Shown in pieces: positions 46,536-64,000 of a stretch of 64,000 nucleotides of DNA. Under the pieces are notes generated by a model. That model worked only from the letters and a program-made list of their open reading frames with translations. It was not told the origin of the DNA and searched no databases. Origin of the DNA: Rebecca billardiae RCC1528. Lineage: Eukaryota > Protista > Haptophyta. The stretch is from NCBI GenBank assembly GCA_965240325.2, contig OZ251223.1, forward strand, positions 3,596,001-3,660,000. The letters are read 5' to 3'. A program made the translations under genes and the position numbers. Each line of letters opens with the position of its first letter. The stretch's first letter is position 1.

Positions 46536-47885
46536 ATGGCGGCACGCCTGGCCGCGCTTGTAGTTCTCGCTGCCCTTGTTGCCCAGAAGGGCAGCGCCGA
46601 GCTCGTGCACGAGGAGCCCGGCGAGCGCTTGCTCGTTGGTGGGCACTCGAGCTCGACGCTCGAATACGACCTTGAGCACGACGCGCCGCGTCTGCCGCCT
46701 GGCTCTGACGAGGCGCTCGAGCACCTGCGGACGCACGGCTACGTTGTGCTCGCGGGTGTGCTCAACGCGAGCGAGGTGGAGGCGGCGCGCGAGCGGCTGT
46801 GGTCCTTCCTCGAGGGCGCGGGTGCCGGCGTGCGCCGTCACGATCCGAGGACATGGGGCCGCGTCGAGCCCAACCAGTACGGCATCGTATGGAACCATGG
46901 CGCGGCGCACTCGGAGCTCATGTGGCGCGTCCGAACTGCGCCCGCGCTGCTGCAGACCTTCGAGCGGCTGTGGGGCACCGATGACCTTCTTGTCAGCTTC
47001 GAGGGCTTCTCCTTCTTCCCGCCCGTTGAGCACGAGGGCGACTTCGGCACCCCGCTCGCAGAGGGCTGGTTCCACACGGACCAGAACGGCGTCTCGCGGC
47101 CCGGCCTGCAGACCATCCAGAGCTTTGTCAGCCTGTACGACCAGGACGCGTCGACGGGCGCGTTCCTCGTCGTGCCGGGCTCGCACGAGCATCACGGCGC
47201 GCTGACGGCACGCGTGCGCGCCGCGCGCCCCGGCACGCCCGACGACCAGCAGTTCCTACTCGTGCCGCCGGACGACCCACTGCTCACCGCGGCGCCGCCC
47301 ACGCTGGTACGCTGCCGCGCCGGCGACGCGGTGCTGTGGGACTCGCGGGCGGTGCACTGCAACACGCCGTCGCTCGCACGCACGACGGCGTGGCGCCGCA
47401 CGGCGCGCGCCGAGCCGCCGGCGCACACGGTGGCGTCGCCGCCGCAGCCCGCGCGCGTCGTCGCATACGCGTCATTTGCGCCGCGCGTGCGCGCGCCGCA
47501 CGCGGTGCTTGGAGCGCGCAAGCGCGCGTTCTTCATGTCGCAGGCGTGCACGCACTGGCCCTTCGACGCGAAGTGCGTGCCGATGCGCGGCGCTGGGCGC
47601 GCGAAGCTGCCCACCGACCTCGAGGACGACCGACAGCTTCTCCTCGTCGGATTCCCCAACTCTACCGACGAGCTCGCCAAGTTCCGGCGCATACTGACTG
47701 TGGGCCACGCGCAGGCGAGAGCGGACGAGCAAGCTGCGCGCGGCCGGCAGCCAAGGCCCCGTGAGCAAGCTAAGCGAGCGGATGCGGGGGCACCTGCGGG
47801 CCCGGACCTGAAAGAGAAGGTCCTCGAGGCTCGGGCCGCGGAGCTTCGCGACCTGCGGGGATTGCACCTGCACGACGAGCTGTGA
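46536..47885 (+). CDS. PhyH-family Fe(II)/2-oxoglutarate dioxygenase with signal peptide and C-terminal HDEL
   Basis: HLRTHGYVVLAGVL; WFHTDQ (HxD); TGAFLVVPGSHE; AGDAVLWDSRAVHCN; ends ...LHDEL-stop. Confidence 0.88.
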   Translation: MAARLAALVVLAALVAQKGSAELVHEEPGERLLVGGHSSSTLEYDLEHDAPRLPPGSDEALEHLRTHGYVVLAGVLNASEVEAARERLWSFLEGAGAGVRRHDPRTWGRVEPNQYGIVWNHGAAHSELMWRVRTAPALLQTFERLWGTDDLLVSFEGFSFFPPVEHEGDFGTPLAEGWFHTDQNGVSRPGLQTIQSFVSLYDQDASTGAFLVVPGSHEHHGALTARVRAARPGTPDDQQFLLVPPDDPLLTAAPPTLVRCRAGDAVLWDSRAVHCNTPSLARTTAWRRTARAEPPAHTVASPPQPARVVAYASFAPRVRAPHAVLGARKRAFFMSQACTHWPFDAKCVPMRGAGRAKLPTDLEDDRQLLLVGFPNSTDELAKFRRILTVGHAQARADEQAARGRQPRPREQAKRADAGAPAGPDLKEKVLEARAAELRDLRGLHLHDEL

Positions 47886-48702: not shown

Positions 48703-50265
48703 TCAGCGCAGCGGCTCACTCTGCGCCACCTGCTCGCCCTGCGCCCAACGCCCGCCGGCGGGCCCGCCATCCCCGTCGGCGAAGGCGCGCCTGCCATCAG
48801 CGCCCAGCCACTCCGCCTTGGGCGGGAGCACCGCGTACTTCAGGAAGCGCAGGTCGACGCCTCCGCACTCGATGGCCATCTTGCGGCTCGTCTTCATCCG
48901 CAGGTGCTGCGTGAGCCGCGAGTTGCCGCACAGCAGCCAGGCGTCGAGCCCGGCCTCGCCCGAGTTGCGCTTGAGGAAGCGGCCGAGGGCGGACCACGCG
49001 GACTCGCCGTCACCGTCACCGTCACGCCCTGCCGACGCGAGCTCGTCGAGCCAGCTCTCGTCCGCGCCCGTGCGCCGCGCGTCCCCGCCGCGGCCGCGGC
49101 TCTGCGGCCCGGCATCGCGCGTGCGCCGCCCGTCGCCGCTCGCCGAGAGGCGGAGGTCCCACGGCGGGTTGGTGATGACGAGCGTGGGCTGGCGGGAGGG
49201 CCGGTAGTCGAGCACATCCTCGCACGTGAGCGTCGCGAGCGACTCGAGCCCCACGCGGCGCAGCGCCTGCTGCGCCAGCCGGAGCGCGCCCGCGTGGTGG
49301 TCGTTGAGCTGCAGCGAGATTGTGCTCGGGGTCACGGCCGCGGCGGCGCGCTCCACGTGCTCGGCCCACTGGGCGCGGTCGTAGTCGGGCCAGAAGCAGA
49401 GAGGGGGCTCGTCAGGCGGCGCGTCGTCGTCCGCGCTCGCGCCGCGCGCCGCGCCCCAGCGCAGCAGCCCCGGCGCCGTGTGCGTCGCGATCAACGCCGC
49501 CTCGACGCCGAGCGTGCCTGAGCCGCACATCGGGTCGCACAGGACGGTGGTGTCGGGGTCGAGGTCGGTGCCGAGGCCGGCCTCGAGCAGCAGCCCGGCG
49601 GCGAGATTCTCGCGCAGCGCGGCCACATGCATCTGCTCGCGGTACCCGCGGCGGTGCAGCGAGCCGTACGGCGAGAGGTAGCGGAAGAGCCACGCCTCGT
49701 CCTCGTGCACGTGCACCTGCAGCGGGAGGTGCGGCGCGCGCGTGTCGACGGAGGGGCGGCGGCCGCCGTGGGCGTCGCGCAGGACGTCGACGAGCGCGTT
49801 CTTCACCGTGAGCGCGGTGAAGTGCGTGTTCGAGAGCGAGCGGTCGACCGAGCCGATCGTCGCGTCGACAGCGAACGTGCAATCCTCGATCTCGCGCACG
49901 CCGCACGCAGCCGTCGTGAGCTGCCGCTCCCATGGCAGCGTGCGCGCAAAGTCGAAGAGCAGCTCCTTGGTGAACCACGTGGTCTCATCCGCGCGAGGCG
50001 GCGGCGGCGCGCGCTCGGTGGCGAGCAGCTCCATCACCCGGTTCGCCGAGCGCAGCCACAGGACGGCGTCCATGCCGGTCGCGCTGTCGCCATCAAACCA
50101 GCAGCCGGCGCGGGCCTCCTCGACGTTCTGAGCCGAGATCGGCGCGGCGCGCAGCTCGCGCGCGAGCACGACCTCCAGCCCGCGGGGGCACGCCGCGAAG
50201 AAGCTGCGCGCCCGCGCTGCTCCCGCTAACATGGACGCCGCGAGCACGGCGGCCACGAGGCGCAT
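48703..50265 (-). CDS. THUMP-domain RNA m2G methyltransferase (RlmL-like)
   Basis: FFAACPRGLEVVLAREL; LWLRSANRV; VKNALVD; SLHRRGYR; ALRENLAAGLL; DPMCGSGT; ITNPPW. Confidence 0.92.
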   Translation of the reverse strand: MRLVAAVLAASMLAGAARARSFFAACPRGLEVVLARELRAAPISAQNVEEARAGCWFDGDSATGMDAVLWLRSANRVMELLATERAPPPPRADETTWFTKELLFDFARTLPWERQLTTAACGVREIEDCTFAVDATIGSVDRSLSNTHFTALTVKNALVDVLRDAHGGRRPSVDTRAPHLPLQVHVHEDEAWLFRYLSPYGSLHRRGYREQMHVAALRENLAAGLLLEAGLGTDLDPDTTVLCDPMCGSGTLGVEAALIATHTAPGLLRWGAARGASADDDAPPDEPPLCFWPDYDRAQWAEHVERAAAAVTPSTISLQLNDHHAGALRLAQQALRRVGLESLATLTCEDVLDYRPSRQPTLVITNPPWDLRLSASGDGRRTRDAGPQSRGRGGDARRTGADESWLDELASAGRDGDGDGESAWSALGRFLKRNSGEAGLDAWLLCGNSRLTQHLRMKTSRKMAIECGGVDLRFLKYAVLPPKAEWLGADGRRAFADGDGGPAGGRWAQGEQVAQSEPLR

Positions 50266-50466
50266 GGTCCGAAGCCGTCCGCGCGGGCCGGGTTCCCGAG
50301 GCCGGCGACCGTTCTGCGACCGCCCGGCGACGTGCTGAAATACACGAAACCTCGTCGGCAGCCATCGCGCTCGCGTGAAGCGAGTTGCCTTGGCCAGGCC
50401 GGGAGGGGAGAGAGGAAGCGCGTTCCGCGCGTCGCCGGTCGCGACTCGTCGTGCGAAACCATCAGC

Positions 50467-51435
50467 ATGGCCGCCGCCGCGATTTTCGTCATCACCCTCT
50501 CCTCACCATCTTGGCAGGGGGGCATCGCGGGCCGAGCGCGCGCCGGGCGCTCGCTCGCCCGCATGGACGCGCGCGTGACCGAGCGGGCGATCTTCTCCTT
50601 CGGGGGTGCCGAGCGCGCGCGCAGCCTGGAGTATTTTGAGCGCGTGGACGACCAGATCATGGGCGGGATCTCACAATCGAGCATCGTCGCAGCAGCCGGA
50701 GCCGACGGCGCGGCGTTCCGCGGCGTGGTGCGCACGGACGGCGGCGGGTTCTGTGGCACGCGTACCCGCCTCTTCGCCTCGCCGCTCGACCTGCGCGACT
50801 TCTCGGGCATCTACCTCCGCGCGCGCGGCGACGGGCAGAGATACAAGGTGAACGTTCGTACCGCGCCTGAGGTGGGCGAGCTCGTGTACCAGTGCTCCTT
50901 CTTGCCGCCAGCCGGCGAGCGCGCGGCGACCGTGCGGATCCCGTTCAGCGCCTTCCGCTGCGTCCGGCGCTCGACGCCCGTGCCCGACGCGCCTCCGCTC
51001 GATGCGCGCACGATCTACCAGCTCGGCCTGGTGCTCTCGCGGTTTGCGCAAGGCGAGGACGACTACAACGACGCGTTCCGACCGGGCCCTTTCTGCCTGG
51101 AGATCGACGAGATCGGCGCGTACCGCGACGCCGCGCTGTTTGCGTCGAGCGTTGACCCCGCGCCGCCGCCCGCCGAAGCGTCGCTCGCAGCTGCGCCGCT
51201 CTCGCGCGGCCTCGAGCTCATGCCCGAGGGCAAGGTGCGCCGGCCGCGGCCGCGCGGGCCGCGCGCGCTCCTCTTCCGCCTGCTGGGCGGCCGCTTCCGC
51301 AAGAAGCTGCGCGCGCGCGTCGCGGCGCGGCGCAGCGCGCGTGCCGCCCAGCTGCTCGAGCAGCGCAAGGCGGGGAGGACCATCTCCGAGCTGCGGCGCG
51401 CCGAGCTGGAGCCTGGGCCGGAGAAGGCAGATTGA
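50467..51435 (+). CDS. CIA30/NDUFAF1-domain protein, probably plastid-targeted
   Basis: VDDQIMGGISQS; FRGVVRTDGGGFCGTR; IYLRARGDGQRYK; VRIPFSAF; GPFCLEI. Confidence 0.9.
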   Translation: MAAAAIFVITLSSPSWQGGIAGRARAGRSLARMDARVTERAIFSFGGAERARSLEYFERVDDQIMGGISQSSIVAAAGADGAAFRGVVRTDGGGFCGTRTRLFASPLDLRDFSGIYLRARGDGQRYKVNVRTAPEVGELVYQCSFLPPAGERAATVRIPFSAFRCVRRSTPVPDAPPLDARTIYQLGLVLSRFAQGEDDYNDAFRPGPFCLEIDEIGAYRDAALFASSVDPAPPPAEASLAAAPLSRGLELMPEGKVRRPRPRGPRALLFRLLGGRFRKKLRARVAARRSARAAQLLEQRKAGRTISELRRAELEPGPEKAD

Positions 51436-51743: not shown

Positions 51744-54700
51744 ATGCTGCGCGGCGTGGCGCTGCTGCTCGCACCGGCGGTGGCGCTTGCGGGCGTGGTG
51801 CGCGTGAACGTGGGCGCCTTCTTCTCCGAGACCACCCCGCTCGCCGCCATCGCCACGTACCGCCTCCTCGACTTCGAGGGCACCAACCACTCGTACCGCT
51901 TCTCGTTCTACAACATGCAGACGGGCGCGCACGCAAACGCGATGCTGCAGGCGGAGGACCTGGACATCTCGGTCGTGGGCAGCCCACCGTGGGTGCTCGG
52001 CACCGCGCGCCGCCTACGCTTCACCGCCGTGTACGTCCTCTCCGAGGCGGGCGGCACATCCGCGCTCGTGGCGCGCGCGGGCTCGGGCATCGTCAACCCG
52101 ACGCACCTGAGCGGCAAGGTGGTCGCGGTGAGCCGGCACTCGACGGTGCACTACCACCTGCTCTTCCTGCTCGACATCCTCTCGATCCCGCCGTCGCGCG
52201 TCGACATCCGCTTCCTCGACCCCGACGCCATCGAGCGCGCGTGGGACGAGGGCGAGATCGACGCGGCGTTCACGTGGGGCACGGCGCTCGAGCACGTGAC
52301 CAGGGCGGGCGGGCACGTGGTGATCACGTCGGGGCAGCTGGGCGCGTGGGGGCGGCGCGCGTTCAACATCGTCGTCGCGCGCGACGCCTTCGCCCGCGAC
52401 CACCCCGAGGCCGTCCAGCGCGTCGTCCGCGTCGCGGACGCGGCGGAGCGCAGCCTGCGCGTCGAGCCGATGGCGTGGGAGCTGCCGGGCGGCGGGGACG
52501 AGGAGGAGGAGGGCGGCGCGCGCGCGGGCTGGACGGTGTTCGAGGGGGCCGCGGCGCTCAACGTGGCCGCGCTCGTCCACGCGCGGCGGCACGCCGACGC
52601 GCTCTCGCAGGGCGGCGGGCGCGCGGGCGTCGACGCGCAGCGCTGGCTGGCGCGCGCGCTCAACGTGAGCGCGCGCACGCTCAACCTCACCGCCGCCGAG
52701 GAGGCGGAGGCGCGCGCGATGGTGCGCGACGAGCCGATCGGGCTGAGGCAGTACACGTTCATCTCCACGCGCGCGCAGCTCTCCGCCGCGTGGTTCGGCG
52801 CCGGCCTCCTCGCCGAGGCGGCCAACGTCCTCGACTTCATCCTCGAGCAGAAGCTGCTTGCGAGGCGCGCGGGGGAGGACGCGGCCGGCTGGTTTGACGC
52901 GCGCTGGGTGCGCGCCGCGCTGGAGGCGCGGCTGGAGGGGCTGCCCGAGGCGGTCGAGCTCGCCGGGCCCGTGCCGTCCGACGAGCTCCTCGAGCGGCTC
53001 AGCCTCTCCGACTCGGAGGGCGCGCCGCTGGAAGCCGGCTCGGCCGACGACGCCGGCTGCAACCGCGCGCACGTGGCCGAGCTCGAGCTGGGCGGCGCGT
53101 CGGCGGGCGGCGCGCACTGGGTGTCGATGCTCGCGAGCAGCGCGTCCAACCGCACCGCGCGCACCTGCGCGGTGCTCGTCCGCGCCCCCGCCGCCGACCT
53201 CGTCCGCGTCGAGCTCTCCCTGCTCGCGCTCGACGTGCTGACGGACACGCTGCGCGTCTTCTCCGGACCGGGCGCGCTCGCGGCCGCGCGCGTGGAGCTC
53301 TCGGCGGAGCAGGCGCGCGACGGCGTGGCGCAGGCGTGGGCGGCGGCGCAGGCGGCGCGCGCGGGCAACGCCACGCTCGTCGCCGACTACACCGGCATGA
53401 TCTCCGCCCGCGCCGCCGAGCGCGGCGAGGACTCGCGCGCGGTGCTCGCGCCTCTCGCCGTGCTCGCGCCGCCGCCGCTGCTGATCGTGCTCGAGCTCGA
53501 CGGCCACGTGTACCAGCCGCTGGGCGGCTGGGTGCAGCAGGGCGTGGCGCTCAACGTGAGCGCGGCCGCGTGCGTCTCGCGCGCCGCCTCGTGCAGCGGC
53601 CACGGCGAGTGCGCGCCCGACGGCCTCGCGTGCGAGTGCGACGGCGGCTTCTACGGCTCGGCGTGCGGCGCGGGCCGGTGCATGGGCACGGTCGAGGCGC
53701 GGCGCGCGCCCGGCGAGGCGGCGTACGGCCTGACGGACGGGTCGTACAGCCTGCCGGGGTACGCGGCGCTGCGCACGGCCGAGTGCCGCTGGGTCCTCTC
53801 CGCGCCGCCCGGCTCGCTCCCCGTCCTCGACTTCGACGCCATCGACGTGCTGCCGTCGGCCGCGCACATCAACGTGTACGCGGGGCGCGCGCCGCTGCTC
53901 GACGCGCTCGTCGTCTCGCTCTCGGGCAACTTCTCGCGGCACGAGCTGCCCACGGCGATCTCGCCGACGCGGCTGCAGCTCGAGATCGCCGCCGCGGCGG
54001 GCGGCGGCAGCCCCGACGGCCGCGTCGAGATGCTCCTCACGCTGCGCGCCTCGGAGGTGTCGGCGCCCTCGCGCTTCGACGCGCGCTTCTGGGCGCGCGA
54101 CGCCGGCGGCGCCGGGTGCGCGCAGGCGGCGGGCGGCGAGGTGTGCAGCGGCGCGGGGACGTGCCACGCGGACGGCACGTGCGAGTGCGACGCGGGCCGG
54201 TACGGCGACAACTGCTGGGCCGCCGCGTGCCTCCCGGGCCTGCCCGTGCTGCACACGGCGCGCGAGGGCGAGCTCTGGTCGTGGCCGCCAGCCGAGCGCG
54301 CCGCGGGCGGCGCCGCCGCGGCCACCAACTGGCACTCGCTCGACTGCCGCTGGGCGATCGCGCCGCCGGCGACGGTCGCGTCGTCGCGCGCGGGCGGCGC
54401 ACCGCGCGCGCTCCGCGGCCTCCGCTTCGGCCTGCTCGACGCCGCGCGCTACCGGCCCGAGCCCTTCCTCGACGCGACGGTCGTCACCGACCTGTCCGCA
54501 TCCGTCACGCACGTCGGGCTGGTGTGGCGAGGCGGCGACTTTTGCTTCGCCGACCAGGAGTGCCGCAACCAGGGCGTGTGCGCGAACGCGATCTACTCGA
54601 CGGGCACGCCGGGGCAGTGCGAGTGCAGGCCCGGCTTCTGGGGCGTCGACTGCGCCAGCCCGACCACCCTCTTCCTCGGAGCGGCCGAGCTGCTCGCGCC

Positions 54701-57698
54701 CGGCGGCGCCGCGGCCGAGGCGGTGCGCTCGCACGCGCTGTTTGGCGCGCTGCCGCCGGCGCAGCAGCGCGGCGTGCTCGTGCACTTCGAGACAGACAAG
54801 AGCCAGTACCCGCCCGAGCGGGAGATGATGCCGCTCGGCTTCTGGTGGTCCGCCGAGTACGACGACGAGTCCGACGTCGCGGCCGCGCCCGCCGACAGCC
54901 GCGGCGGCGGCGACAGCGGCGCCGACGAGGCCGTCGACGCCGCGCCGGGCGGCGTGCGCGTGGTGACCGAGCTGCCGGCGCTCACGCTGATCGCGCTCGC
55001 GCTGGGCGCGTGCGCGTGCGCGTGCGTGTGCGCGCCGCTCCTCGCGCGCGCCGTGCGCGAGCGCACGCGCACCCTCGCCGACGTGCACGCGCGCGAGTCG
55101 CGCGCCACGCCGGCCAACATGCCGCCGTGCATCTTCCTGTCTCACTACAAGGGCGACGAGGGCGACGCGGCGCGGCTGCTCAAGCACCTGCTGCGCCAGC
55201 TCGTGCTGCCGGCGAAGGGGTCGGGCGCGCTGCGCGGGCGCGGCGCGGGCGCGGCCGCGCGCGCCGCCGCGCCGCAGGCCGTGCCCATCTTCCTCGACTC
55301 GGACGACCTCGTCGACCTGAGCGACCTCCTCCGCTCGGTGGTGCGCTCGCGCGTGGTCGTGCTGCTGTGCTCGCCGAGCGTGCTGCACCGGCCGTGGGTG
55401 ATGTGCGAGGTGGTGGCGGCGTGGATGCTGGGGAAGCCGCTCGTGCCGGTGTGGATGTACGACACCGCGTGCCGCCGCGCGCCGCTCCACCTCCCGCCCG
55501 CCCACGCCGACGCCATCTCCGCCACCCTCGCCGCCCTCGGCGCGGAAGGGCTCGGCATCGTGACCGAGCAGACGGGCGCGAGTGAGCCGCAGGTGCGCGA
55601 GGCGCTGGCGTCGCTCTCGGCGCTCGAGCCGAGGCTCGAGTTCGAGCGGAGCGGGCCGGAGGAGCGGCAGTGGGCGCAGGCCGAGCGCATCGCGCGCCGC
55701 GTCATCGAGCTCGGCTCCGCGCAGCCGCGCTCGGCCTCGCTGACGCGGCCGCGGCCGTCGCCAGTCACGCGGCCGCGCCTACGGCCAAAGCGGGCTGCAG
55801 CGAGCGCGCGCGGCGCTGTGCGCGAGCTCGCAGTGGAGAGCGCGGGCGCGGAGGAGGCCGGGCGGCGCGCCGTCGCGCCCGCGGCGGCGCCGCGGGCCGC
55901 AGCGACGGCGCCGCCCCGCATCCAGCGCTCCGCCTACTCCGACTTTGTGCAGCCAAACGCGGCGGCCGCGCTCATGCGATTCCGTGCCGACTTTCTGAGC
56001 GACACGCGCGCGCAGGTGCTCGCGAGCGCGCCGCTGGAGCTCAACACGGCGCCGGTGTGCCGCCGGTGGATCAGGCCGTCGCTCGGGCCGTCCGAGCTGA
56101 GCTCGACGCTCGCGCTGCTCGTCTGCTCGCCCCGGGACCTGTGCAACGCGCACGTGATCAAGCTCATCCTCGCCGTCCACCACCGGTACGGCGCGCGCCG
56201 GCTGATGGCGCCGTACCGCGGCGTGCTCGCGCTCTCGCAGCGCGAGTGGCGGCTGCCGGAGGAGGAGCGGCGGCATGGCGAGGGTGGGGAGGGCGGCGAG
56301 GGCGGCGAGGCCTCGCGCGGCGCGTGCGTGGGGCCCGCGGCTGACGCGGTGGCCGCACCGCCGCCGCCGCTCAAGCCACCGCCACCGCTGTCGCAGCCGC
56401 AGCCCCAGCCGCTGCCGGAGCTTCAGCAGCCGCCGCCGCCGCCGCCGCCGCCGCCGCAGGAGCAGCCGCAGCCTCAGCCGCTGTCGGAGCCTCAGCAGCC
56501 GCCGCCGCTGCCGCAGGAGCAGCCGCAGCCTCAGCAGCAGCCGCAGCGGCTCGCTCCGCTCAAGGCAGCGCAATCGGAGGGGCCGCCGCCGACGCCATCG
56601 CCACCGCGGCCGACTCCGACGGAGCCACTCCCATCCGACGGGCTGGCGCCGCCGCTGCCGCTGCAACCACCGCCGCCGCCCGAGGGCGCGCCCTCGGCCG
56701 AGCGCCGCGGCAGCGGCTTTGCAAGCGGGCTCGCGGCGGTGACGAGCGCTGCGGAGCGCGGCGCGCGCTCCGTGCTCGCGCCGGTCGCGCACCTGGGCGC
56801 AGCGGGCGCGCGCTCCGTGCTCGCGCCGGCTGCGCAGCTGAGCGCGGCCGGCTTCCGCCGCTCCCCGCGCCCCAGCGGCTCGGAGACCGACGACACGGAA
56901 GCGGAGGGCGCGGGAGCAGCAGAGGCCGGCCCGTTCGGCAGCGCGGAGGCTCGGGTCCGCGACCGAGTGACCCGGCTCGCGTCCGCGCCCAACCTGCTCG
57001 TGCTGCTCGGCGCCGGCCTGTTTGAGGACGCGCCGAGCGTGTGCACGATCGCGCTGGCGCACAAGCTGGGCGTGCACACCGTGCCGATCCTCGCGATCGG
57101 CGGCGGCTTCGACTTCAGCGCGTACGGCGCCGCGTGGATGGAGCAGCTGCTGCGCCGCGCCGTCTTCTCCGCCAAGGGCTGGGACTACCTCGAGCGGCAC
57201 GGGATCTCGCCGCCCGAGGTGCAGGCAGCGCTCGAGCACCTGCTCAAGGTGATCGCGCACCCGTTCGCGCCGCACGGCAGCTCCGAGCTGCAGTACGCGC
57301 AGGTGCGGGCCGTGCTGCACAGCCTGCGGCCCATCGGCGGCATGCACAGCACGCTGTGCCGCTGGCTGCCTTGGGAGGAGCGGGCGCCCGCGCCGCGCGG
57401 CGCCGGGGATGCCCGCCGCGCGCTGCCGCCGAGGCTGCGCGTGGAGGCGCGCAACGCGGGCGACGTGGACAAGCGCGTGCGCGTGCAGCGCGCCTCGCCC
57501 GGGCACGCACCGCTCAGGCCGGCCATCCTCAGCCCGTCGCAACGCCGCGCAGGAGCCTCCGCGTGGGCGGCGTTCAGCTCGTCGTCGGGCAGCACGTTAT
57601 TCCGCCTGCGCGGCTGTGGCACGGGCGTGGCGGCGGCAGCGGCGGCGGCGGCGGCGGCATCGACGAGCGAAGAGGGCGACAGTCTGCGGCGCGTGTGA
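51744..57698 (+). CDS. Single-pass receptor: signal peptide - TauA-like solute-binding domain - CUB-like/EGF repeats - TM - TIR - degenerate TIR (~1984 aa)
   Basis: Solute-binding part: LSGKVVAVSRHSTVHYHL, DPDAIERAWDEGEIDAAFTW, FARDHPEAV. EGF: CSGHGEC..CECDGGFYGSAC (x3). TM: LTLIALALGACACACVCAPLL. TIR: IFLSHYK...IFLDSDDL...VVLLCSPSVLHRPWVMCEV. Confidence 0.85.
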   Translation: MLRGVALLLAPAVALAGVVRVNVGAFFSETTPLAAIATYRLLDFEGTNHSYRFSFYNMQTGAHANAMLQAEDLDISVVGSPPWVLGTARRLRFTAVYVLSEAGGTSALVARAGSGIVNPTHLSGKVVAVSRHSTVHYHLLFLLDILSIPPSRVDIRFLDPDAIERAWDEGEIDAAFTWGTALEHVTRAGGHVVITSGQLGAWGRRAFNIVVARDAFARDHPEAVQRVVRVADAAERSLRVEPMAWELPGGGDEEEEGGARAGWTVFEGAAALNVAALVHARRHADALSQGGGRAGVDAQRWLARALNVSARTLNLTAAEEAEARAMVRDEPIGLRQYTFISTRAQLSAAWFGAGLLAEAANVLDFILEQKLLARRAGEDAAGWFDARWVRAALEARLEGLPEAVELAGPVPSDELLERLSLSDSEGAPLEAGSADDAGCNRAHVAELELGGASAGGAHWVSMLASSASNRTARTCAVLVRAPAADLVRVELSLLALDVLTDTLRVFSGPGALAAARVELSAEQARDGVAQAWAAAQAARAGNATLVADYTGMISARAAERGEDSRAVLAPLAVLAPPPLLIVLELDGHVYQPLGGWVQQGVALNVSAAACVSRAASCSGHGECAPDGLACECDGGFYGSACGAGRCMGTVEARRAPGEAAYGLTDGSYSLPGYAALRTAECRWVLSAPPGSLPVLDFDAIDVLPSAAHINVYAGRAPLLDALVVSLSGNFSRHELPTAISPTRLQLEIAAAAGGGSPDGRVEMLLTLRASEVSAPSRFDARFWARDAGGAGCAQAAGGEVCSGAGTCHADGTCECDAGRYGDNCWAAACLPGLPVLHTAREGELWSWPPAERAAGGAAAATNWHSLDCRWAIAPPATVASSRAGGAPRALRGLRFGLLDAARYRPEPFLDATVVTDLSASVTHVGLVWRGGDFCFADQECRNQGVCANAIYSTGTPGQCECRPGFWGVDCASPTTLFLGAAELLAPGGAAAEAVRSHALFGALPPAQQRGVLVHFETDKSQYPPEREMMPLGFWWSAEYDDESDVAAAPADSRGGGDSGADEAVDAAPGGVRVVTELPALTLIALALGACACACVCAPLLARAVRERTRTLADVHARESRATPANMPPCIFLSHYKGDEGDAARLLKHLLRQLVLPAKGSGALRGRGAGAAARAAAPQAVPIFLDSDDLVDLSDLLRSVVRSRVVVLLCSPSVLHRPWVMCEVVAAWMLGKPLVPVWMYDTACRRAPLHLPPAHADAISATLAALGAEGLGIVTEQTGASEPQVREALASLSALEPRLEFERSGPEERQWAQAERIARRVIELGSAQPRSASLTRPRPSPVTRPRLRPKRAAASARGAVRELAVESAGAEEAGRRAVAPAAAPRAAATAPPRIQRSAYSDFVQPNAAAALMRFRADFLSDTRAQVLASAPLELNTAPVCRRWIRPSLGPSELSSTLALLVCSPRDLCNAHVIKLILAVHHRYGARRLMAPYRGVLALSQREWRLPEEERRHGEGGEGGEGGEASRGACVGPAADAVAAPPPPLKPPPPLSQPQPQPLPELQQPPPPPPPPPQEQPQPQPLSEPQQPPPLPQEQPQPQQQPQRLAPLKAAQSEGPPPTPSPPRPTPTEPLPSDGLAPPLPLQPPPPPEGAPSAERRGSGFASGLAAVTSAAERGARSVLAPVAHLGAAGARSVLAPAAQLSAAGFRRSPRPSGSETDDTEAEGAGAAEAGPFGSAEARVRDRVTRLASAPNLLVLLGAGLFEDAPSVCTIALAHKLGVHTVPILAIGGGFDFSAYGAAWMEQLLRRAVFSAKGWDYLERHGISPPEVQAALEHLLKVIAHPFAPHGSSELQYAQVRAVLHSLRPIGGMHSTLCRWLPWEERAPAPRGAGDARRALPPRLRVEARNAGDVDKRVRVQRASPGHAPLRPAILSPSQRRAGASAWAAFSSSSGSTLFRLRGCGTGVAAAAAAAAAASTSEEGDSLRRV
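56355..56690 (+). repeat. Pro/Gln-rich low-complexity coding repeat (ccg/cag)
   Basis: PPPPLSQPQPQPLPELQQPPPPPPPPPQEQPQPQ... Confidence 0.85.
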
Positions 57699-57986
57699 GG
57701 GCGCCGCGCTGCAGATAGCACAGAGCCGAGGGCCCGTGCCGCGCAGAGTGGGCGTTGCCCCTTGCCGCCTCGCAATTGCAGCTCTCCAGCCAGCCTTCGG
57801 GGCGAGTTGTAGCGACATATTCGGGTGCGCGTGTCGAAAGGTCGCGTTGGCCGTTGGCGCCCATCGTGCACCGGTGTACGTACTTCTACTTCACTTGTGG
57901 AGAAAGCCGCCATGCGCCGCCGCTCCCCCGCGGAGTGGCTCGGGCCGGTCGACATTCGGAAGCACACGCCCATTGGGTACTCGCAG

Positions 57987-59615
57987 ATGTCCGACGAGTT
58001 CATCCGGGCCGACCGCTACACCAGCGTCTTCTGGCCCGGCGGTCGGTCGAAGGAGCCGCCGAGCGTTCTTCTCGCAAAGCGGATGGACGCGCTCTCCGTG
58101 GCGATCCGCCAGAAGGATGGGTGGGCGGAGAAGGTGCGGGACCCCGAGGTCGTGGCGCGATGGCGCGGTGAGGCGGTGTCGCAGGGTCTTGATCCGCTCG
58201 CCGCCGATCGCGTCATCCGCGAGCTCGACCACCTCGCGCGCACGCGCGTGTCGGCAGCGGGCGCGCGCCCCGCACCGGTGAACGGCTGCTTCGAGTCGGA
58301 CACCGCGCTCTCCGCGGAGCTGCTCGGCGCGCTGCAGGCCGGCGCGCGCGAGCTCGAGGGCGAAGGCCCGCCCGACTACCACCCGCTCAGCGACGACCTC
58401 GTCGTCGACCTCCTCCACCCGTCCCTCTGCCCGCTCGTCTCCGACCTGACGCACGTCCGAGCGGACGAGCCGCTGGCGAGCGTGCCGGCCGACGGGCCGC
58501 GGCGGTTCCAGTGGCTGCCGGCGGAGGTGGACGTGGGCGCGGATGGCGCGTGCACGTTCGCCTCGCCGATCAACGGCCTGCACCCCCGGCGCCACTCGGC
58601 GCTCACCCGCTCCATCGAGCGCGCGCTCAGCGCGTGCCTGCCTCTGCTCGAGGAGACGCTGACTGAGCTGCGGCGCGCACGTGCGCGCGCCATGCTCTCG
58701 AGCGCGCCGCCGTGCGGCTTCGACATGTACGCGCTGTGGGAGCCATTCGAGCAGTGGATCGAGCGCGCGTATCCCGAGCAAGCCTCCTGCGCGCCCGAGC
58801 ACATGGACGAGCTCGAGGACGTGTACCTCGACGAGTACCAGGAGACGCGCGAAGGGCAGCTCGGCGGCTGGCCCGCGCCGCTGCCGTTCGCGCCGCCGGA
58901 GCCGCCGCCGCCGGACCGGGTGGCGCGGCTGCGCGGCCGGCGGCTGCAGGTGATCGTCAAGATGTCGGACGTGCGCCTCGACGGCGAGCGCGCCTCGCGC
59001 TACCCGGGCGGCGCGTGGCACTGCGAGGGCGAGCCGCAGGAGTGCATCTGCGCCACCGCCCTCTGCTACTACGAGCTGGCAAACGTGGCGGACTCGCGGC
59101 TGCAGTTCCGGCGCGCGTGCGATGAGTTTGGCGTGGAGTACGAGCAGGACGACGAGCGAGGCGTGCGCGAGGTGTACGGCATCGAGCTCGACGGCGATCG
59201 CACGGCGGTGCTCCTTCCCGAGCCGGCGGGCGAGCTGATCTGCCGCGAGGGCCGCGCCGTCGCCTTCAACAACGTGCTGCAGCACAGGCTCGCGCCGTTC
59301 GAGGCCGCGCGCGCGGGCGCGCCGGCCGTGCGGCGCGTGCTCGCTTTCTTCCTCGTCGACCCCGCGGTGCGGATCCCGTCGACCGCGCACGTCGCCCCGC
59401 AGCAGGAGTCGTACATGCGCGAGCTGCTCGAGCGCAGCCCCCTCTTCGCGCGGCTGCCCGACGCGCTGCTCTCGCGCATCCTCGGCCTGGTGCCCTCTGT
59501 CTTCTCCAAGGAGAAGGCGGACGCGGTGCGGCTCGAGCTGATGGCGCGCAGGCGCCGGGCCGACGAGGTGATCGGCCACTCGTTCGGCGGCGAGTTTAGC
59601 CTGTGCGAGCACTAA
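57987..59615 (+). CDS. DUF4246-family protein (2OG-Fe(II) oxygenase-like)
   Basis: IRQKDGWAEKVRDPEVVARW; DYHPLSDDLVVDLLHPSLCPL; FQWLPAEV; LQVIVKM; YPGGAWHCEG; REGRAVAFNNVLQHRLAPF; FFLVDP; STAHVAPQQ; FSLCEH. Start could be 57912. Confidence 0.88.
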   Translation: MSDEFIRADRYTSVFWPGGRSKEPPSVLLAKRMDALSVAIRQKDGWAEKVRDPEVVARWRGEAVSQGLDPLAADRVIRELDHLARTRVSAAGARPAPVNGCFESDTALSAELLGALQAGARELEGEGPPDYHPLSDDLVVDLLHPSLCPLVSDLTHVRADEPLASVPADGPRRFQWLPAEVDVGADGACTFASPINGLHPRRHSALTRSIERALSACLPLLEETLTELRRARARAMLSSAPPCGFDMYALWEPFEQWIERAYPEQASCAPEHMDELEDVYLDEYQETREGQLGGWPAPLPFAPPEPPPPDRVARLRGRRLQVIVKMSDVRLDGERASRYPGGAWHCEGEPQECICATALCYYELANVADSRLQFRRACDEFGVEYEQDDERGVREVYGIELDGDRTAVLLPEPAGELICREGRAVAFNNVLQHRLAPFEAARAGAPAVRRVLAFFLVDPAVRIPSTAHVAPQQESYMRELLERSPLFARLPDALLSRILGLVPSVFSKEKADAVRLELMARRRRADEVIGHSFGGEFSLCEH

Positions 59616-60073: not shown

Positions 60074-62101
60074 TCAGTATTCGTCGACGTCAGCGTCAGC
60101 GCCCCGTCGGTCACCATTCACTCCGCTATTGCCGCCGTTGGCCTCAGGGCCGCCGCCCCGCTTGGCCTCCATCTCCGCGTCCCGCGCTCTCAGGATGCAT
60201 GCCTGTGTCATCGTGTGCCGCGCGCATACGCCGCAGGCGCACCGACGCAGCATGGCAATGATGGGTGCAGGTGGGCCGCCATCGCGCATCAGGGTCAGCA
60301 CGCGCCACTGCATGCCCACATGCGTGGTGCCGCTGCGGGCGGCTCGATGCCGCCGGAGGGGCCAGCAGGTGGCGGAGGCGCTCTCGGGCCAGCGCACGGG
60401 CGCAGGGCACGAGGCGCGCGGGCACGTGGGCGCGCGCACCAGTGTCTCGTCGAGGTCAACCAGCCGCTCGTCCGGCGCCATCTCTGTGAGTGCCCTCCAC
60501 TCACCCGCGCCGCGCGAGCCGGGCGGCACTCCCGCCCACGCGTGCGTCGGGGTTTCGCCGATGCTGGCGCCCAGCCCGCCGCGCGTGCCGCCGTGGCGCC
60601 TGCTCGCCTTCTCCTGCGCGGCGCGATCTTTGCGCAGGCGCCGCACGCTGATCGACGCCTCGTCCAGCGCGTCGAGCAGCGCCGGCAGCGAGGCCGCCTT
60701 CAGCGCCATGTGCTCAGCCAGTGACGTCTCGCCACTCAGCCGGCGCGCCGCGTCGCGCGCGCACCCGAGCGTGAGCAGCGCGCGGCCCCGCGCGAGCAGC
60801 GCGCCGATGGTGCCCTCGGCCATGGGCTCGAGGGTGTGCGTGAGCGCGACGAGGTACATGTCGCACCGCGCAAGCGACGAGGTGAGCAGCAGCTCGCGGA
60901 ACGCGCGCACGCGCCGCCACACCGCGCAGCCCTCGTCCGCATACGCGTCGAGCGCGGGCAGCAGCCGGAAGGCGATGAAGCGCTTGGTGGCGGAGCCCAG
61001 CTGCAGCCGCTCGTGGTAGTGCTCGCCGGCAAACTCGGGGAGCGTGATGCGCTCGAGCGGGAGGTGCGCCTCCTCCGCCCGCGCCGCCGGCTCCGGCGGT
61101 GCGGCCTGCGCGTCGGCGCCCGCCCCGCCCGCCGCGAGCGCAGCCGCTCCGCCCGGGTGCGCCGCCCGCGCCCCTGCGGCAGCGGCGCTCAGGCCGGGGG
61201 CGTGCGGCGGCCGACGGCCGATGCCGGCGGCACGGGCATGCTCGCGGCGCTCGAGCGCGCGCGCGTTGGGCGGCGCAGGCAGCTCGAGATCCGAGCGGAT
61301 CTTCGCCACGAGCAGCGTCGCGATCTCGGCGAGCAGCTCCGCCGCCGTGAGGGGCGGCACCGGGCGCGTCGGCAGGCCGTGCTCGGCCGTGCCGGCGCGC
61401 AGCCACGAGTGCCAGAGGTCCGGACGCCTCTGCCGGTGGCGGTCGGGCTGCCGCGAAGAGCGCGAGCGCGCGGCGGCGCCAAAGTCGCGCGGCGACCGAG
61501 CGCTCCTCGGCGTGGGGCTCGCGGGAAGCGCGTCGAAGCGCGAGCGCGTGCCGGCGCGCTGCACGCTCCCGCCGACGCCGGCGGGCGGTGGCCCGGAGAG
61601 GTGGGCCGTGGCGCTGTGCTGCCCGAGCCCCTCGGCCTGCATCATCAGGAGGGCGACGAGAGGGTTGGCGTCCTCGTCCCACCAGGGCAGGTCGTCCTGC
61701 CACAGCGGCAGCGCCGCCACCCCGCGAGCTGCCTCCGCTGCCTCCGCTGCGGCGCGCTTGCTGGCCAGCTCCTCGCGCGTCGGCCGAGCCGGGACCTTTG
61801 CTCGGGGCCCTCCGTTGCGCGGGGTGGCGAGGGCGAGGCCGGAGAAGTCGCTGTCGAGTTGTGAGGCGCTCGGAAGCGTCCTCACCGACGGCGGGGCGAA
61901 CACCCACGCGTCCTCGCCGTCATCGCGCGTGTGGGCAGCGCAAGTGGGCGGCGGCATCTGTGCCGGCGTGGACTGCAACCGACCACGCGCCGTGAGTGGT
62001 GCGCGCGCCGTCGACGCATCGCGAGGCGAGCGCGCTGCGGACACGCGGCTGTGGGTGCCTGGCGCGCGTCGACCTGCCGATGCCGGTCGCGCACTGCGCA
62101 T
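60074..62101 (-). CDS. Hypothetical protein
   Basis: Long ORF with GC3 bias in this frame; disordered N-half and helical core (LERITLPEFAGEHYHERLQ...). No family recognised; start uncertain. Confidence 0.6.
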   Translation of the reverse strand: MRSARPASAGRRAPGTHSRVSAARSPRDASTARAPLTARGRLQSTPAQMPPPTCAAHTRDDGEDAWVFAPPSVRTLPSASQLDSDFSGLALATPRNGGPRAKVPARPTREELASKRAAAEAAEAARGVAALPLWQDDLPWWDEDANPLVALLMMQAEGLGQHSATAHLSGPPPAGVGGSVQRAGTRSRFDALPASPTPRSARSPRDFGAAARSRSSRQPDRHRQRRPDLWHSWLRAGTAEHGLPTRPVPPLTAAELLAEIATLLVAKIRSDLELPAPPNARALERREHARAAGIGRRPPHAPGLSAAAAGARAAHPGGAAALAAGGAGADAQAAPPEPAARAEEAHLPLERITLPEFAGEHYHERLQLGSATKRFIAFRLLPALDAYADEGCAVWRRVRAFRELLLTSSLARCDMYLVALTHTLEPMAEGTIGALLARGRALLTLGCARDAARRLSGETSLAEHMALKAASLPALLDALDEASISVRRLRKDRAAQEKASRRHGGTRGGLGASIGETPTHAWAGVPPGSRGAGEWRALTEMAPDERLVDLDETLVRAPTCPRASCPAPVRWPESASATCWPLRRHRAARSGTTHVGMQWRVLTLMRDGGPPAPIIAMLRRCACGVCARHTMTQACILRARDAEMEAKRGGGPEANGGNSGVNGDRRGADADVDEY

Positions 62102-63901: not shown

Positions 63902-64000
63902 TCGTGAATGCGCGAGGCGCCGGCTTCTCCTGTCGCGCAATGGCGGCGGTCTAGGTCGCGGGAGGAATCGTCTGCTTGCCGATCAGCATCATCTTATTAG

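What the first reader, a model, noticed from the sequence alone, without database searches (positions are those of the whole stretch)
51744..57698. Toll-like receptor architecture with a bacterial taurine-binding (TauA-like) ectodomain and a catalytic TIR domain
Seen: one uninterrupted ORF carrying a signal peptide, a solute-binding fold (~51800-52930), three EGF modules alternating with CUB-like beta domains, one TM helix (~54970-55050) and a TIR domain from 55131 with RPWVMCE (Glu at 55407-55409). Established knowledge: the N-terminal domain follows the motif order of the ABC taurine-binding protein TauA (SsuA/NMT1 class) as I recall it (GSxP; LxGKxxAV..STxHY; AWxxGxIDxAxxW; FAxxHPE; FxxEQ). 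The WxxxE Glu is the catalytic residue of TIR NADases (SARM1, plant TNLs, ThsB). Inference: a surface receptor that couples binding of taurine or another sulfonate to TIR enzymatic signalling, with a probably horizontally acquired ligand-binding module in place of LRRs. This would be a candidate metabolite, microbe or grazer sensing system in an alga. I know of no description of this architecture but could not search.
Basis: partly seen in the sequence, partly recalled or inferred. Interest (0 to 1): 0.9.

Follow-up and report, generated by a model that had tools for sequence, protein, structure and literature searches.

The report
Algal TauA-type binding domain TIR receptor
This GC-rich alga has one real gene for a surface receptor-like protein that joins a bacterial-type small-molecule binding domain (closest to the taurine-binding protein TauA, but with a changed pocket) to an internal TIR immune-type enzyme domain; it belongs to a wider, almost unstudied set of protist receptors built from the same parts.

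Summary
Window 51744-57698 (+) is one uninterrupted 1984-codon ORF, with third-position GC of 0.94-1.00 starting exactly at the ATG.

- **Layout:** signal peptide, TauA-fold binding domain, three CUB-like/EGF pairs, one membrane helix, a TIR domain, a roughly 400-residue low-complexity insert, and a conserved C-terminal TIR-like half domain.
- **Binding domain:** it hits TIGR01729 at 2e-40. Its model matches E. coli TauA at TM 0.91.
- **TIR:** the model matches plant NLR and SARM1 TIRs. E1222 aligns with the SARM1 catalytic residue E642.

The interpretation needs three corrections.

- **Ligand:** the TauA residues that hold taurine (Gln30, Glu106, Asp205) are Phe, Ser and Asn here, so taurine itself is doubtful.
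- **Origin:** the binding domain belongs to a eukaryote-wide clade. There the TauA-like/CUB/EGF cassette is also wired to kinase, guanylate cyclase, WWE-PARP and class C 7TM outputs. This is not a recent transfer into this alga.
- **TIR module:** elsewhere the same module sits mostly behind ANF-receptor-type binding domains. One such Gephyrocapsa receptor was described briefly in 2025.

I found only one other protein that combines TauA-like and TIR, and no paper on TauA-type ectodomain receptors. Transcript, ligand and enzyme activity are untested. An earlier scan note reports an unchecked paralogue in this genome.

The parts
51744..51794 (+). Start codon and signal-peptide-like hydrophobic N-terminus (aa 1-17)
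   Evidence: Hydropathy above 1.8 over aa 1-25. GC3 rises from 0.56 to 0.96 exactly at 51744.
51795..52943 (+). TauA-class (NMT1/SsuA-type, class II) solute-binding domain, aa 18-400, with an insert at about aa 247-335
   Evidence: TIGR01729 at 2e-40. Pfam NMT1 at 26.6 bits, above the 20.5 cut-off. PDB TauA 6ssy at 2.7e-24. AF2 model has pLDDT 84.5, and its Foldseek best hit is TauA at E 1e-23 and TMt 0.91. Pocket columns are F27, G61, G79, S106, T134, W178 and N208.
53061..53570 (+). CUB-like beta domain 1 (about aa 440-609)
   Evidence: A profile built from homologues' Pfam CUB domains hits aa 473-524. The Cys439-Cys475 spacing is CUB-like. There is no Pfam hit on the query itself.
53571..53681 (+). 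EGF module 1 (aa 610-646)
   Evidence: Pfam EGF_Teneurin and EGF_TEN at aa 614-647, with EGF_2 above its cut-off for the protein. Six-Cys pattern.
53682..54116 (+). CUB-like beta domain 2 (aa 647-791)
   Evidence: The homologue-CUB profile hits aa 665-743, including the CRW motif.
54117..54230 (+). EGF module 2 (aa 792-829)
   Evidence: Best Pfam EGF_2 stretch is aa 792-824.
54231..54542 (+). CUB-like beta domain 3 (aa 830-933), the weakest of the three
   Evidence: Only the LDCRW motif at aa 864-874 matches the CUB profile. Homologues P0003 and P0157 have a third CUB at the same place.
54543..54653 (+). EGF module 3 (aa 934-970)
   Evidence: Six-Cys pattern. Weak EGF_laminin hit at aa 942-972.
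54972..55043 (+). Single transmembrane helix (aa 1077-1100)
   Evidence: It is the only long stretch with hydropathy above 1.8 apart from the signal peptide and a Pro-rich segment at aa 565-585. All seven N-x-S/T sequons lie N-terminal to it.
55116..55718 (+). TIR domain 1 (aa 1125-1325), with W1218 and E1222 (55407-55409) in the catalytic-type WxxxE motif and a low-complexity insert between alpha-A and beta-B
   Evidence: Pfam TIR_2 at 26.2 bits, just under the 28 cut-off. AF2 model has pLDDT 74.9 and a beta-alpha TIR topology. Foldseek best hits are L6, RPS4, RPV1 and SARM1 TIRs. The profile hits SARM1 TIR at 7e-6 with E aligned to E642. W and E are invariant in the family alignment A3.
55719..56954 (+). 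Low-complexity Pro/Gln/Ala-rich cytosolic insert (aa 1326-1737), which contains a degenerate TIR-like beta-C/alpha-C motif at about aa 1455-1490
   Evidence: No Pfam hit. It is absent from homologues, where TIR1 and the C-terminal domain are adjacent. GC3 of 0.80-1.00 and an open frame argue that it is coding.
56955..57353 (+). Conserved C-terminal TIR-like half domain (aa 1738-1870) that lacks the Trp and Glu
   Evidence: It matches the C-terminal part of the family cytosolic profile (nodes 225-340, 3e-08). It also matches P0130 540-657 at 1.4e-10. Alignment A1 shows DAPSVCT in place of RPWxxxE.
57696..57698 (+). Stop codon

Best explanation
This is one nuclear gene for a type I (single-pass) membrane protein of 1984 residues, built as a receptor. 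Outside the membrane, a clam-shell binding domain of the TauA/SsuA class sits on a stalk of three CUB-like/EGF pairs. Inside, a TIR domain of the enzymatic type (catalytic-position Glu1222) is followed by a long disordered insert and a degenerate TIR-like half domain. The most likely mechanism has three steps. First, a small, probably anionic (sulfonate-like) extracellular metabolite closes the binding domain. The ligand is unlikely to be taurine bound in TauA's way, because the taurine-amine ligands Glu106 and Asp205 and the sulfonate ligand Gln30 are replaced. Second, this rearranges or clusters the receptors through the stalk. Third, the cytosolic TIR domains self-associate and cleave NAD+, either making a signal nucleotide or depleting NAD+. 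What is shown: the gene structure, the folds, the pocket substitutions, the position of the Glu, and the modular family context. What is inferred: the surface location, ligand class, clustering mechanism and NADase activity. The protein sits at the intersection of two modular protist families. In one, the TauA-like/CUB/EGF ectodomain cassette is attached to kinase, kinase plus guanylate cyclase, WWE-PARP, class C 7TM or TIR outputs. In the other, this tandem TIR module is attached to ANF-receptor/LIVBP-type, OpuAC-type, PA or TauA-like ectodomains.
For: Single coding exon: the frame is open and GC3 is 0.94-1.00 from ATG 51744, at 0.80 or above throughout, with non-coding values on both flanks. 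The neighbours are separate, ordinary nuclear genes (CIA30 ends at 51435; DUF4246 starts at 57825). Binding domain: TIGR01729 at 2e-40, TauA structure at 2.7e-24, and a model with TMt 0.91 to TauA and an E-value eight orders better than SsuA. Pocket: F27/S106/N208 against Q30/E106/D205, with G61, G79, T134 and W178 kept (residue roles from PMC6906117). Receptor topology: signal peptide, one TM, and all Cys-rich modules and N-glycosylation sequons on the N-terminal side. TIR: fold matches to plant NLR and SARM1 TIRs, E1222 aligned to SARM1 E642, and W/E invariant in the family. Homologue P0003 carries the same TauA-like/CUB/EGF ectodomain and the same TIR plus half-TIR module in one uninterrupted 1849-aa ORF on two independent environmental contigs. 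The same ectodomain cassette drives enzymes activated by dimerisation: a receptor kinase in Tetraparma and a kinase plus guanylate cyclase in Chromosphaera. This fits a ligand-induced rearrangement mechanism. Protist TIRs with the conserved Glu were reported to be NADases (preprint 10.64898/2026.04.20.719644). A Gephyrocapsa binding-domain/EGF-TM-TIR gene is induced 0.5 h after virus addition (PMC12489294).
Against: No transcript evidence was available: no RNA run was listed, and the exact protein is absent from the 15-billion-protein collection. Pfam TIR_2 is just under its cut-off (26.2 against 28), and the TIR model has only moderate confidence (pLDDT 74.9, from an 8-sequence alignment). 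The three side chains that define taurine recognition in TauA are changed, so the ligand class is a guess. Related SBPs of this fold bind pyrimidines, PQQ, nitrate or bicarbonate. A conserved Glu two residues after Phe27 ('YFxE') could supply a new amine contact, so amine-bearing ligands are not excluded either. The roughly 400-residue insert between TIR1 and the C-terminal domain is absent from homologues and could affect or abolish coupling. The third CUB is barely detectable.
Confidence: 0.68

Rival explanations
1. The architecture is the same, but the TIR works only as a protein-interaction scaffold, as in the classical adaptor model of Toll-like receptor signalling. It would recruit other TIR proteins rather than cleave NAD+.
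For: Pfam TIR_2 is below its cut-off. The protein carries a second, clearly non-catalytic TIR-like half domain, which suggests TIR-TIR interaction surfaces matter. Earlier scan notes report many other TIR-like genes in this genome that could be partners (unchecked).
Against: Trp1218 and Glu1222 are invariant across distant family members. Glu1222 aligns with the catalytic SARM1 E642. The best structural matches are all enzymatic TIRs. A 2026 preprint reports that protist TIRs, and even animal TLR TIRs, with this Glu are catalytic.
Confidence: 0.17
2. The TauA-like domain no longer binds a small molecule. Together with the CUB and EGF modules it acts as an adhesion or protein/glycan-recognition ectodomain.
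For: Three of the TauA ligand-contact side chains are replaced. CUB and EGF domains are typical of protein-protein recognition. A roughly 90-residue insert with lower model confidence interrupts the second lobe.
Against: The whole two-lobe fold is retained at TM 0.91 to ligand-bound TauA. The replacement residues are themselves conserved as a clade signature (F / Q or S / N, plus the 'YFxE' Glu) across distant eukaryotes. That pattern indicates a maintained, re-tuned pocket rather than decay. Main-chain sulfonate contacts and Trp178 are kept.
Confidence: 0.1
3. The gene model is wrong. The long ORF is either two adjacent genes read together, or an open frame kept by the extreme GC content, with introns or a transcript end inside it (for example in the Pro/Gln-rich stretch).
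For: At 75-77% GC, stop codons are rare, and long ORFs occur in several frames and on the antisense strand. The aa 1326-1737 stretch has no homologue counterpart and a slightly lower GC3 of 0.80-0.92. No RNA data were available.
Against: GC3 stays far above the flanking non-coding level (0.5-0.6) over the whole ORF, in this frame only, and starts at the ATG. Recognisable domains occur in the receptor order from one end to the other, including a conserved domain after the insert (aa 1738-1865). Homologue P0003 has the ectodomain and both TIR parts in one ORF. By my own estimate from base composition (not a tool result), about 240 codons of the insert staying open by chance has a probability near 0.04.
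Confidence: 0.05

Closest known systems
E. coli TauA, the periplasmic taurine-binding protein of the TauABC importer (PDB 6ssy; PMC6906117)
   Same: Same two-lobe class II binding fold over the whole TauA length (TMt 0.91, E 1e-23). About 22% sequence identity in the structural alignment, with clear homology over aa 58-245 (2.7e-24). Conserved Gly61, Gly79, Thr132 and Trp176 equivalents.
   Different: It is not a free periplasmic protein feeding an ABC transporter. It is the N-terminal domain of a eukaryotic membrane protein. Gln30, Glu106 and Asp205 are Phe, Ser and Asn. A roughly 90-residue insert is present. The score is well below the TIGR01729 equivalog cut-off (139 against 304 bits).
Gephyrocapsa huxleyi cogent1101_i1 and the ANF-receptor/Ephrin_rec_like/TM/TIR family of dinoflagellates and other marine protists (PMC12489294; Polarella glacialis CAE8646997.1)
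   Same: A receptor-like layout with a bacterial-type binding domain outside, Cys-rich spacers, a membrane segment and a cytosolic TIR with the conserved Glu. For the Polarella and environmental family, which I tested, the TIR module is homologous to this one, including the C-terminal half domain. For cogent1101_i1 only the layout is known, from the paper; I did not have its sequence.
   Different: Those proteins use a type I (LIVBP/ANF-receptor) binding domain, and the environmental and Polarella proteins mostly have Ephrin_rec_like repeats and several TM helices. This protein uses a type II TauA-class domain, CUB/EGF spacers and a single TM helix, and it has a roughly 400-residue insert in the tail.
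Animal Toll-like receptors
   Same: Type I membrane protein with an extracellular recognition domain, one TM helix and a cytosolic TIR domain.
   Different: There are no leucine-rich repeats. The TIR is closer in structure to plant NLR and SARM1 TIRs. The resemblance is one of layout, not descent.
Venus-flytrap receptors (class C GPCRs, natriuretic-peptide receptor guanylate cyclases, ionotropic glutamate receptors)
   Same: A bacterial periplasmic-binding-protein fold reused as the ligand sensor of a eukaryotic membrane receptor. Relatives of this very ectodomain are fused to 7tm_3 and to kinase plus guanylate cyclase.
   Different: The known receptors use type I (ANF/LIVBP) or the amino-acid-binding type II fold, not the NMT1/SsuA/TauA class. 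The output here is a TIR domain.
SARM1 and plant TNL TIR NADases
   Same: TIR fold and a WxxxE Glu aligned with SARM1 E642.
   Different: No ARM/SAM or NB-LRR regulatory domains. It is membrane-anchored behind an extracellular sensor. Activity is untested.

Membership tests
TauA (taurine ABC transporter substrate-binding protein, TIGR01729 equivalog) | Score above the curated equivalog cut-off (304 bits) | tested here: not met
   139.1 bits, E 2e-40, covering aa 56-246 only.
TauA (taurine ABC transporter substrate-binding protein, TIGR01729 equivalog) | Class II two-lobe SBP fold superimposable on TauA | tested here: met
   AF2 model with pLDDT 84.5. Foldseek best hit is 6ssy at E 1e-23, TMt 0.91 and rmsd 3.1.
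TauA (taurine ABC transporter substrate-binding protein, TIGR01729 equivalog) | Taurine-coordinating side chains Gln30, Glu106, Thr132 and Asp205 (PMC6906117) | tested here: not met
   The alignment columns give F27, S106, T134 and N208, so only the Thr is kept.
TauA (taurine ABC transporter substrate-binding protein, TIGR01729 equivalog) | Works with TauBC permease and ATPase partners | tested here: not met
   The domain is fused into a eukaryotic membrane protein. Pfam on nine neighbouring ORFs found none of the ABC transporter type; the five with hits are CIA30, a THUMP methyltransferase, DUF4246, a bestrophin and PhyH.
NMT1/SsuA/THI5-like SBP superfamily (Pfam PF09084) | Pfam gathering score | tested here: met
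   26.6 bits against a 20.5 cut-off, aa 62-233.
TIR domain (Pfam TIR_2 PF13676 / TIR superfamily) | Pfam gathering score | tested here: not met
   20.6 bits in the full protein and 26.2 bits for the domain alone, against a 28 cut-off.
TIR domain (Pfam TIR_2 PF13676 / TIR superfamily) | Flavodoxin-like beta-alpha TIR fold | tested here: met
   The model shows beta-A to alpha-E in order. The 50 Foldseek matches listed, of 500 counted, are all TIR domains, with TMt 0.58-0.74 for isolated TIR chains. The family profile hits SARM1 TIR at 7e-6.
Enzymatic (NADase) TIRs | Catalytic Glu in the WxxxE position at the start of alpha-C | tested here: met
   E1222 aligns with SARM1 E642. W1218 and E1222 are invariant in alignment A3.
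Enzymatic (NADase) TIRs | NAD+ cleavage activity | not testable with these tools
   This needs a biochemical assay.
Toll-like receptors | Leucine-rich-repeat ectodomain | tested here: not met
   No LRR family appears in the Pfam scan. The ectodomain is SBP plus CUB-like plus EGF.
Toll-like receptors | Single TM helix followed by a cytosolic TIR | tested here: met
   TM at aa 1077-1100 and TIR from aa 1125.
CUB domain (PF00431) | Pfam match | tested here: inconclusive
   No Pfam hit on the query segments. A profile of homologues' Pfam-positive CUBs hits aa 473-524 and 665-743, and only a short motif at aa 864-874.
EGF-like domain (PF07974 EGF_2) | Pfam gathering score and six-Cys pattern | tested here: met
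   27.4 bits against a 22.1 cut-off, in three stretches. Six Cys in each of aa 610-641, 792-824 and 934-970.
Eukaryotic TauA-like/CUB/EGF receptor ectodomain clade (defined here) | Groups with eukaryotic multidomain receptors and shares the F / Q or S / N pocket signature | tested here: met
   A 20-row clade with SH-aLRT 99 holds the query and all the multidomain proteins that carry CUB/EGF after the binding domain; four other multidomain rows (P0033, P0043, P0088, P0142) fall outside it (quick tree).

The most novel reading that the evidence does not exclude
Marine protists have a previously unrecognised family of surface metabolite receptors. Its sensor is a eukaryote-specific, re-tuned clade of the bacterial TauA/SsuA binding domain, probably reading an abundant dissolved organosulfonate or a related small anion. 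The sensor is wired interchangeably to NAD+-consuming outputs (TIR here, WWE-PARP in diatoms), to kinases, to guanylate cyclase and to class C 7TM domains. In this alga, the TIR version would link an extracellular chemical cue from bacteria, grazers or lysed neighbours directly to TIR-type NAD+ signalling or cell death.
Probability: 0.3. Interest if true: 0.85.

Novelty: new variant of a known kind. Interest (0 to 1): 0.68.

Why it matters
TIR-based immunity in microalgae is only beginning to be described, and what the algal TIR receptors recognise is unknown. This gene offers a tractable case. Its sensor domain has a well-understood bacterial relative with solved ligand complexes, so the ligand can be sought by simple binding screens. 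The same sensor cassette recurs on kinase, cyclase, PARP and GPCR outputs in diatoms, bolidophytes, Picozoa and an animal relative. A ligand found for one member would therefore annotate a whole class of protist receptors. If the ligand is a marine organosulfonate, it would connect the plankton sulfonate economy to cell-fate signalling.

Tried and rejected
- **Word-indexed homologue searches:** two searches with the binding domain (as a region of the full-length protein and as an isolated piece) returned nothing. Ala/Gly-rich words probably swamped the candidate list. The exhaustive HMMER search showed that relatives do exist.
- **RNA evidence:** no run was listed for this stretch, so read laying was not used and the single-transcript question stays open.
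- **Metagenome scans:** the scan with the query protein found no relative. A first alignment was too variable to scan with. A tighter TIR alignment gave 20 loci, none with a TauA-like domain upstream.
- **Pfam on the inter-EGF segments and the tail:** nothing was found.
- **Taurine as ligand:** considered and set aside because of the pocket columns.
- **Recent bacterial transfer into this alga:** considered and set aside because of the eukaryote-wide clade. No bacterial donor can be named from this tree, which is a quick, midpoint-rooted tree with several long branches.
- **Literature:** searches for TauA or NMT1-type ectodomain receptors and for TIR plus solute-binding proteins in algae found no description. 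The diatom GPCR survey mentions only PBP1-type domains.
Full report
**The observation**

The window is very GC-rich (0.59-0.81 in 2-kb windows, 0.76-0.78 over the gene). Long open frames therefore occur in many frames, including antisense to the finding.

It is open from 51432 to the stop at 57696-57698. Third-position GC jumps from about 0.56 to 0.96 exactly at the ATG at 51744. It then stays at 0.94-1.00 through most of the ORF, dips to 0.80-0.92 only in a Pro/Gln-rich stretch, and falls to 0.56 after about 57600.

The ATG opens a hydrophobic signal-like peptide. One further strongly hydrophobic helix lies at aa 1077-1100. All seven N-x-S/T sequons, and nearly all the cysteines (arranged as three six-Cys EGF patterns), lie between those two.

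**The binding domain**

- Pfam gives NMT1 above its cut-off.
- NCBIfam gives the taurine-binding equivalog TIGR01729 as best hit (2e-40, 139 bits). That score is far below the equivalog cut-off of 304 bits.
- The only solved structure found by sequence is E. coli TauA (2.7e-24).
- An AlphaFold2 model built on a 75-sequence alignment has pLDDT 84.5 and pTM 0.83.
- The model's best Foldseek match is TauA 6ssy (E 1e-23, TM 0.91 normalised to TauA). SsuA follows at 1e-15, then other members of the NMT1/ThiY/PqqT class.

**The pocket**

The TauA paper (PMC6906117) gives the contacts.

- The sulfonate is held by the Gln30 side chain and by the main-chain NH of Gly61, Gly79 and Thr132.
- The amine is held by Glu106 (essential), Thr132 and Asp205 (the selectivity residue, which is Gly in SsuA).

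In the alignment this protein has Phe27, Gly61, Gly79, Ser106, Thr134, Trp178 and Asn208. The Phe / Gln-or-Ser / Asn pattern, plus a Glu two residues after the Phe ('YFxE'), is shared by most of the eukaryotic relatives. The canonical TauA-like sequences have Gln/Glu/Asp. I read this as a maintained but re-tuned pocket. A sulfonate-like anion remains plausible. Taurine bound in the TauA manner does not.

**Relatives of the ectodomain**

An exhaustive HMMER search with aa 50-1249 against 1.84 billion representatives found 1364 hits. The best scored only 124 bits, so there is no close orthologue in the library. The exact protein is not in the 15-billion-protein collection.

The long hits are the informative ones. 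The same TauA-like domain, followed by CUB and EGF modules and a membrane segment, is joined to different outputs.

| Output | Source | Protein |
|---|---|---|
| Protein kinase | Tetraparma gracilis | P0157 |
| Kinase plus guanylate cyclase | Chromosphaera perkinsii (ichthyosporean) | P0011 |
| WWE-PARP | Thalassiosira sp. and others | P0151, P0065, P0125, P0162 |
| Class C 7TM domain | MMETSP transcript | P0154 |
| Multi-pass membrane block plus TIR | Environmental contigs | P0003 |

Picozoa and Nitzschia also have members.

In a quick maximum-likelihood tree of 75 binding domains, the query and all the multidomain proteins that carry CUB/EGF after the binding domain form one clade. It has SH-aLRT 99 and is separate from the 55 canonical TauA-like rows. 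Four other multidomain rows (P0033, P0043, P0088, P0142) fall among the canonical rows. The tree is midpoint-rooted and has some long branches, so I draw only a limited conclusion. The domain was not recently taken from a bacterium by this alga. It is an old eukaryotic receptor cassette, whatever its ultimate origin.

**CUB-like domains**

The query's own inter-EGF segments get no Pfam hit. I built a profile from eight CUB segments of homologues, placed from Pfam CUB matches, though for several no single stretch passed on its own. It matches aa 473-524 and 665-743, and only the LDCRW motif at aa 864-874.

Homologues P0003 and P0157 have three CUBs in the same positions. The Cys spacing fits the first CUB disulfide. 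'CUB-like' is therefore a fair description, weakest for the third copy.

**The TIR**

- Pfam TIR_2 is just under its cut-off (26.2 against 28 bits for the isolated domain).
- The Atlas feature search places the segment among haptophyte TIR clusters.
- An AlphaFold2 model from a shallow alignment (pLDDT 74.9, pTM 0.75) has the beta-A to alpha-E order of a TIR.
- Its best PDB matches are all TIR domains: flax L6, RPS4, RPV1/RUN1, SNC1, RPP1 and SARM1 (E 1e-4 to 1e-3, TM to target 0.6-0.74).
- A profile of the family hits the SARM1 TIR at 7e-6. The family motif 'rpWvvcE' lies on SARM1 'DWVHKE', so Glu1222 corresponds to the catalytic Glu642.
- In an alignment with six distant relatives, the Trp and Glu are invariant, as are the beta-A FL and the beta-B FLxSD motifs.

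A 2026 preprint reports NADase activity for protist TIRs chosen by this Glu (10.64898/2026.04.20.719644). Activity here is inferred, not shown.

**The tail**

A profile of the cytosolic region of six relatives matches the query at aa 1130-1242 and again at aa 1738-1865. In the relatives these two parts are adjacent. Here they are separated by the rest of TIR1 plus about 400 residues of Pro/Gln/Ala-rich sequence. That sequence also holds a degenerate 'LLVCSP...' beta-C/alpha-C-like motif.

The C-terminal domain looks like the second half of a TIR but lacks the Trp and Glu (DAPSVCT). This agrees in outline with the earlier first-reader note on a second, degenerate TIR interrupted by a Pro/Gln insertion.

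**Relatives of the TIR module**

I searched with the cytosolic part of P0003 and scanned metagenome contigs with the TIR alignment. The same module usually follows an ANF-receptor/Peripla_BP_6 (type I, LIVBP-like) binding domain, Ephrin_rec_like repeats and several membrane helices.

This includes annotated Polarella glacialis proteins. Other versions carry OpuAC, PA or NCD3G domains. None of the 20 metagenome loci has a TauA-like domain. Among all proteins fetched, only P0003 combines it with this TIR module. P0003 is an uninterrupted 1849-aa ORF on two independent environmental contigs, which shows the combination is not peculiar to this assembly.

**Literature**

I found no paper that describes a TauA-, SsuA- or NMT1-type domain as a eukaryotic receptor ectodomain, or such a domain joined to TIR.

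The nearest description is in PMC12489294. Gephyrocapsa huxleyi cogent1101_i1 is described as an extracellular region with structural similarity to leucine-binding and EGF-like domains, a TM helix, and a TIR with the conserved Glu. It is expressed 0.5 h after virus addition. The general idea of a binding-domain/EGF-TM-TIR receptor in haptophytes is therefore already in print, briefly. The TauA-class sensor, and the modular family shown here, are not.

**Surroundings**

The gene lies between ordinary nuclear genes.

- A CIA30 gene ends at 51435, 308 bases of lower-GC DNA before the ATG.
- A THUMP/RlmL-type methyltransferase is on the minus strand.
- A PhyH-domain gene lies further upstream.
- A DUF4246 gene starts at 57825.
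- A bestrophin-like gene is on the minus strand.

Nothing suggests an operon-like functional link or a mobile element around the gene.

**Mechanism**

The most likely working model is a ligand-gated clustering receptor.

1. Closure of the binding domain around a small extracellular anion rearranges the CUB/EGF stalk.
2. That brings the cytosolic TIR domains together.
3. TIR enzymes need self-association to form the active site (established for SARM1, plant TNLs and bacterial TIRs).
4. The protein then cleaves NAD+.

The use of the same cassette on receptor kinases and guanylate cyclases, which are switched by dimer rearrangement, fits this model but does not prove it. Two of the alternative outputs, TIR and PARP, both use NAD+. 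I note this without being able to explain it.

**Earlier scan notes**

These were used as leads only. One first-reader note reports a TauA-like/CUB/EGF-TM-TIR gene on another piece of this genome, a likely paralogue that I could not reach. Several notes call the genome a pavlovophyte or haptophyte-type alga with many TIR-like fusion receptors. I did not verify the organism.

**Verdict**

The 'taurine' and 'horizontal acquisition' parts need softening. The gene is best seen as a new variant within a broader, barely described set of modular protist receptors.

Noticed in passing
P0151 / P0065 (Thalassiosira sp.), P0162, P0125, P0143: The same TauA-like/CUB ectodomain cassette is fused through one TM helix to WWE plus PARP catalytic domains. 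PARP is a second NAD+-using output for the same sensor.
   Followed up: partly
P0011 (Chromosphaera perkinsii), P0157 (Tetraparma gracilis GMI20348.1), P0154 (MMETSP transcript): The TauA-like ectodomain is also found on a kinase plus guanylate cyclase receptor in an ichthyosporean, on a receptor kinase in a bolidophyte, and on a class C 7tm_3 GPCR.
   Followed up: partly
L006, L011, L012, L017, L019 (metagenome contigs); Polarella glacialis CAE8646997.1 (P0167): A widespread marine protist family has an ANF_receptor/Peripla_BP_6 domain, Ephrin_rec_like repeats, a multi-TM block, and the same TIR plus half-TIR module. Variants carry OpuAC (P0165), PA (P0166) or NCD3G (P0169) ectodomains.
   Followed up: partly
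window 55719-56954: A roughly 400-residue Pro/Gln/Ala-rich insert separates TIR1 from the conserved C-terminal domain. Relatives lack it. It includes a degenerate TIR-like motif (LALLVCSPRDLCNAHV, about aa 1455-1490).
   Followed up: partly
window 52014-55505 (-) and other frames: Very long antisense and off-frame ORFs (up to 1163 aa) overlap the gene. They are a by-product of GC3 near 1.0, not evidence of further genes.
   Followed up: partly
window 50332-51435 (+), 48703-50265 (-), 46023-47885 (+): The upstream neighbours are a CIA30 (complex I assembly) gene, a THUMP/RlmL-like methyltransferase gene and a PhyH-domain dioxygenase gene.
   Followed up: partly
window 57825-59615 (+), 62501-63940 (-): The downstream neighbours are a DUF4246 protein gene and a bestrophin-like (Bestrophin_2) channel gene. 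High-GC3 blocks of about 1350 nt at 58203-59552, 60303-61652 and 62553-63902 have similar sizes. The middle one got no Pfam hit.
   Followed up: no
P0100 (704 aa, JGI contig): This is a tandem-TIR protein of this family with a sugar-transporter fragment and an isochorismatase domain at its N-terminus. Isochorismatase-family enzymes include nicotinamidases, so this may be another link to NAD metabolism.
   Followed up: no
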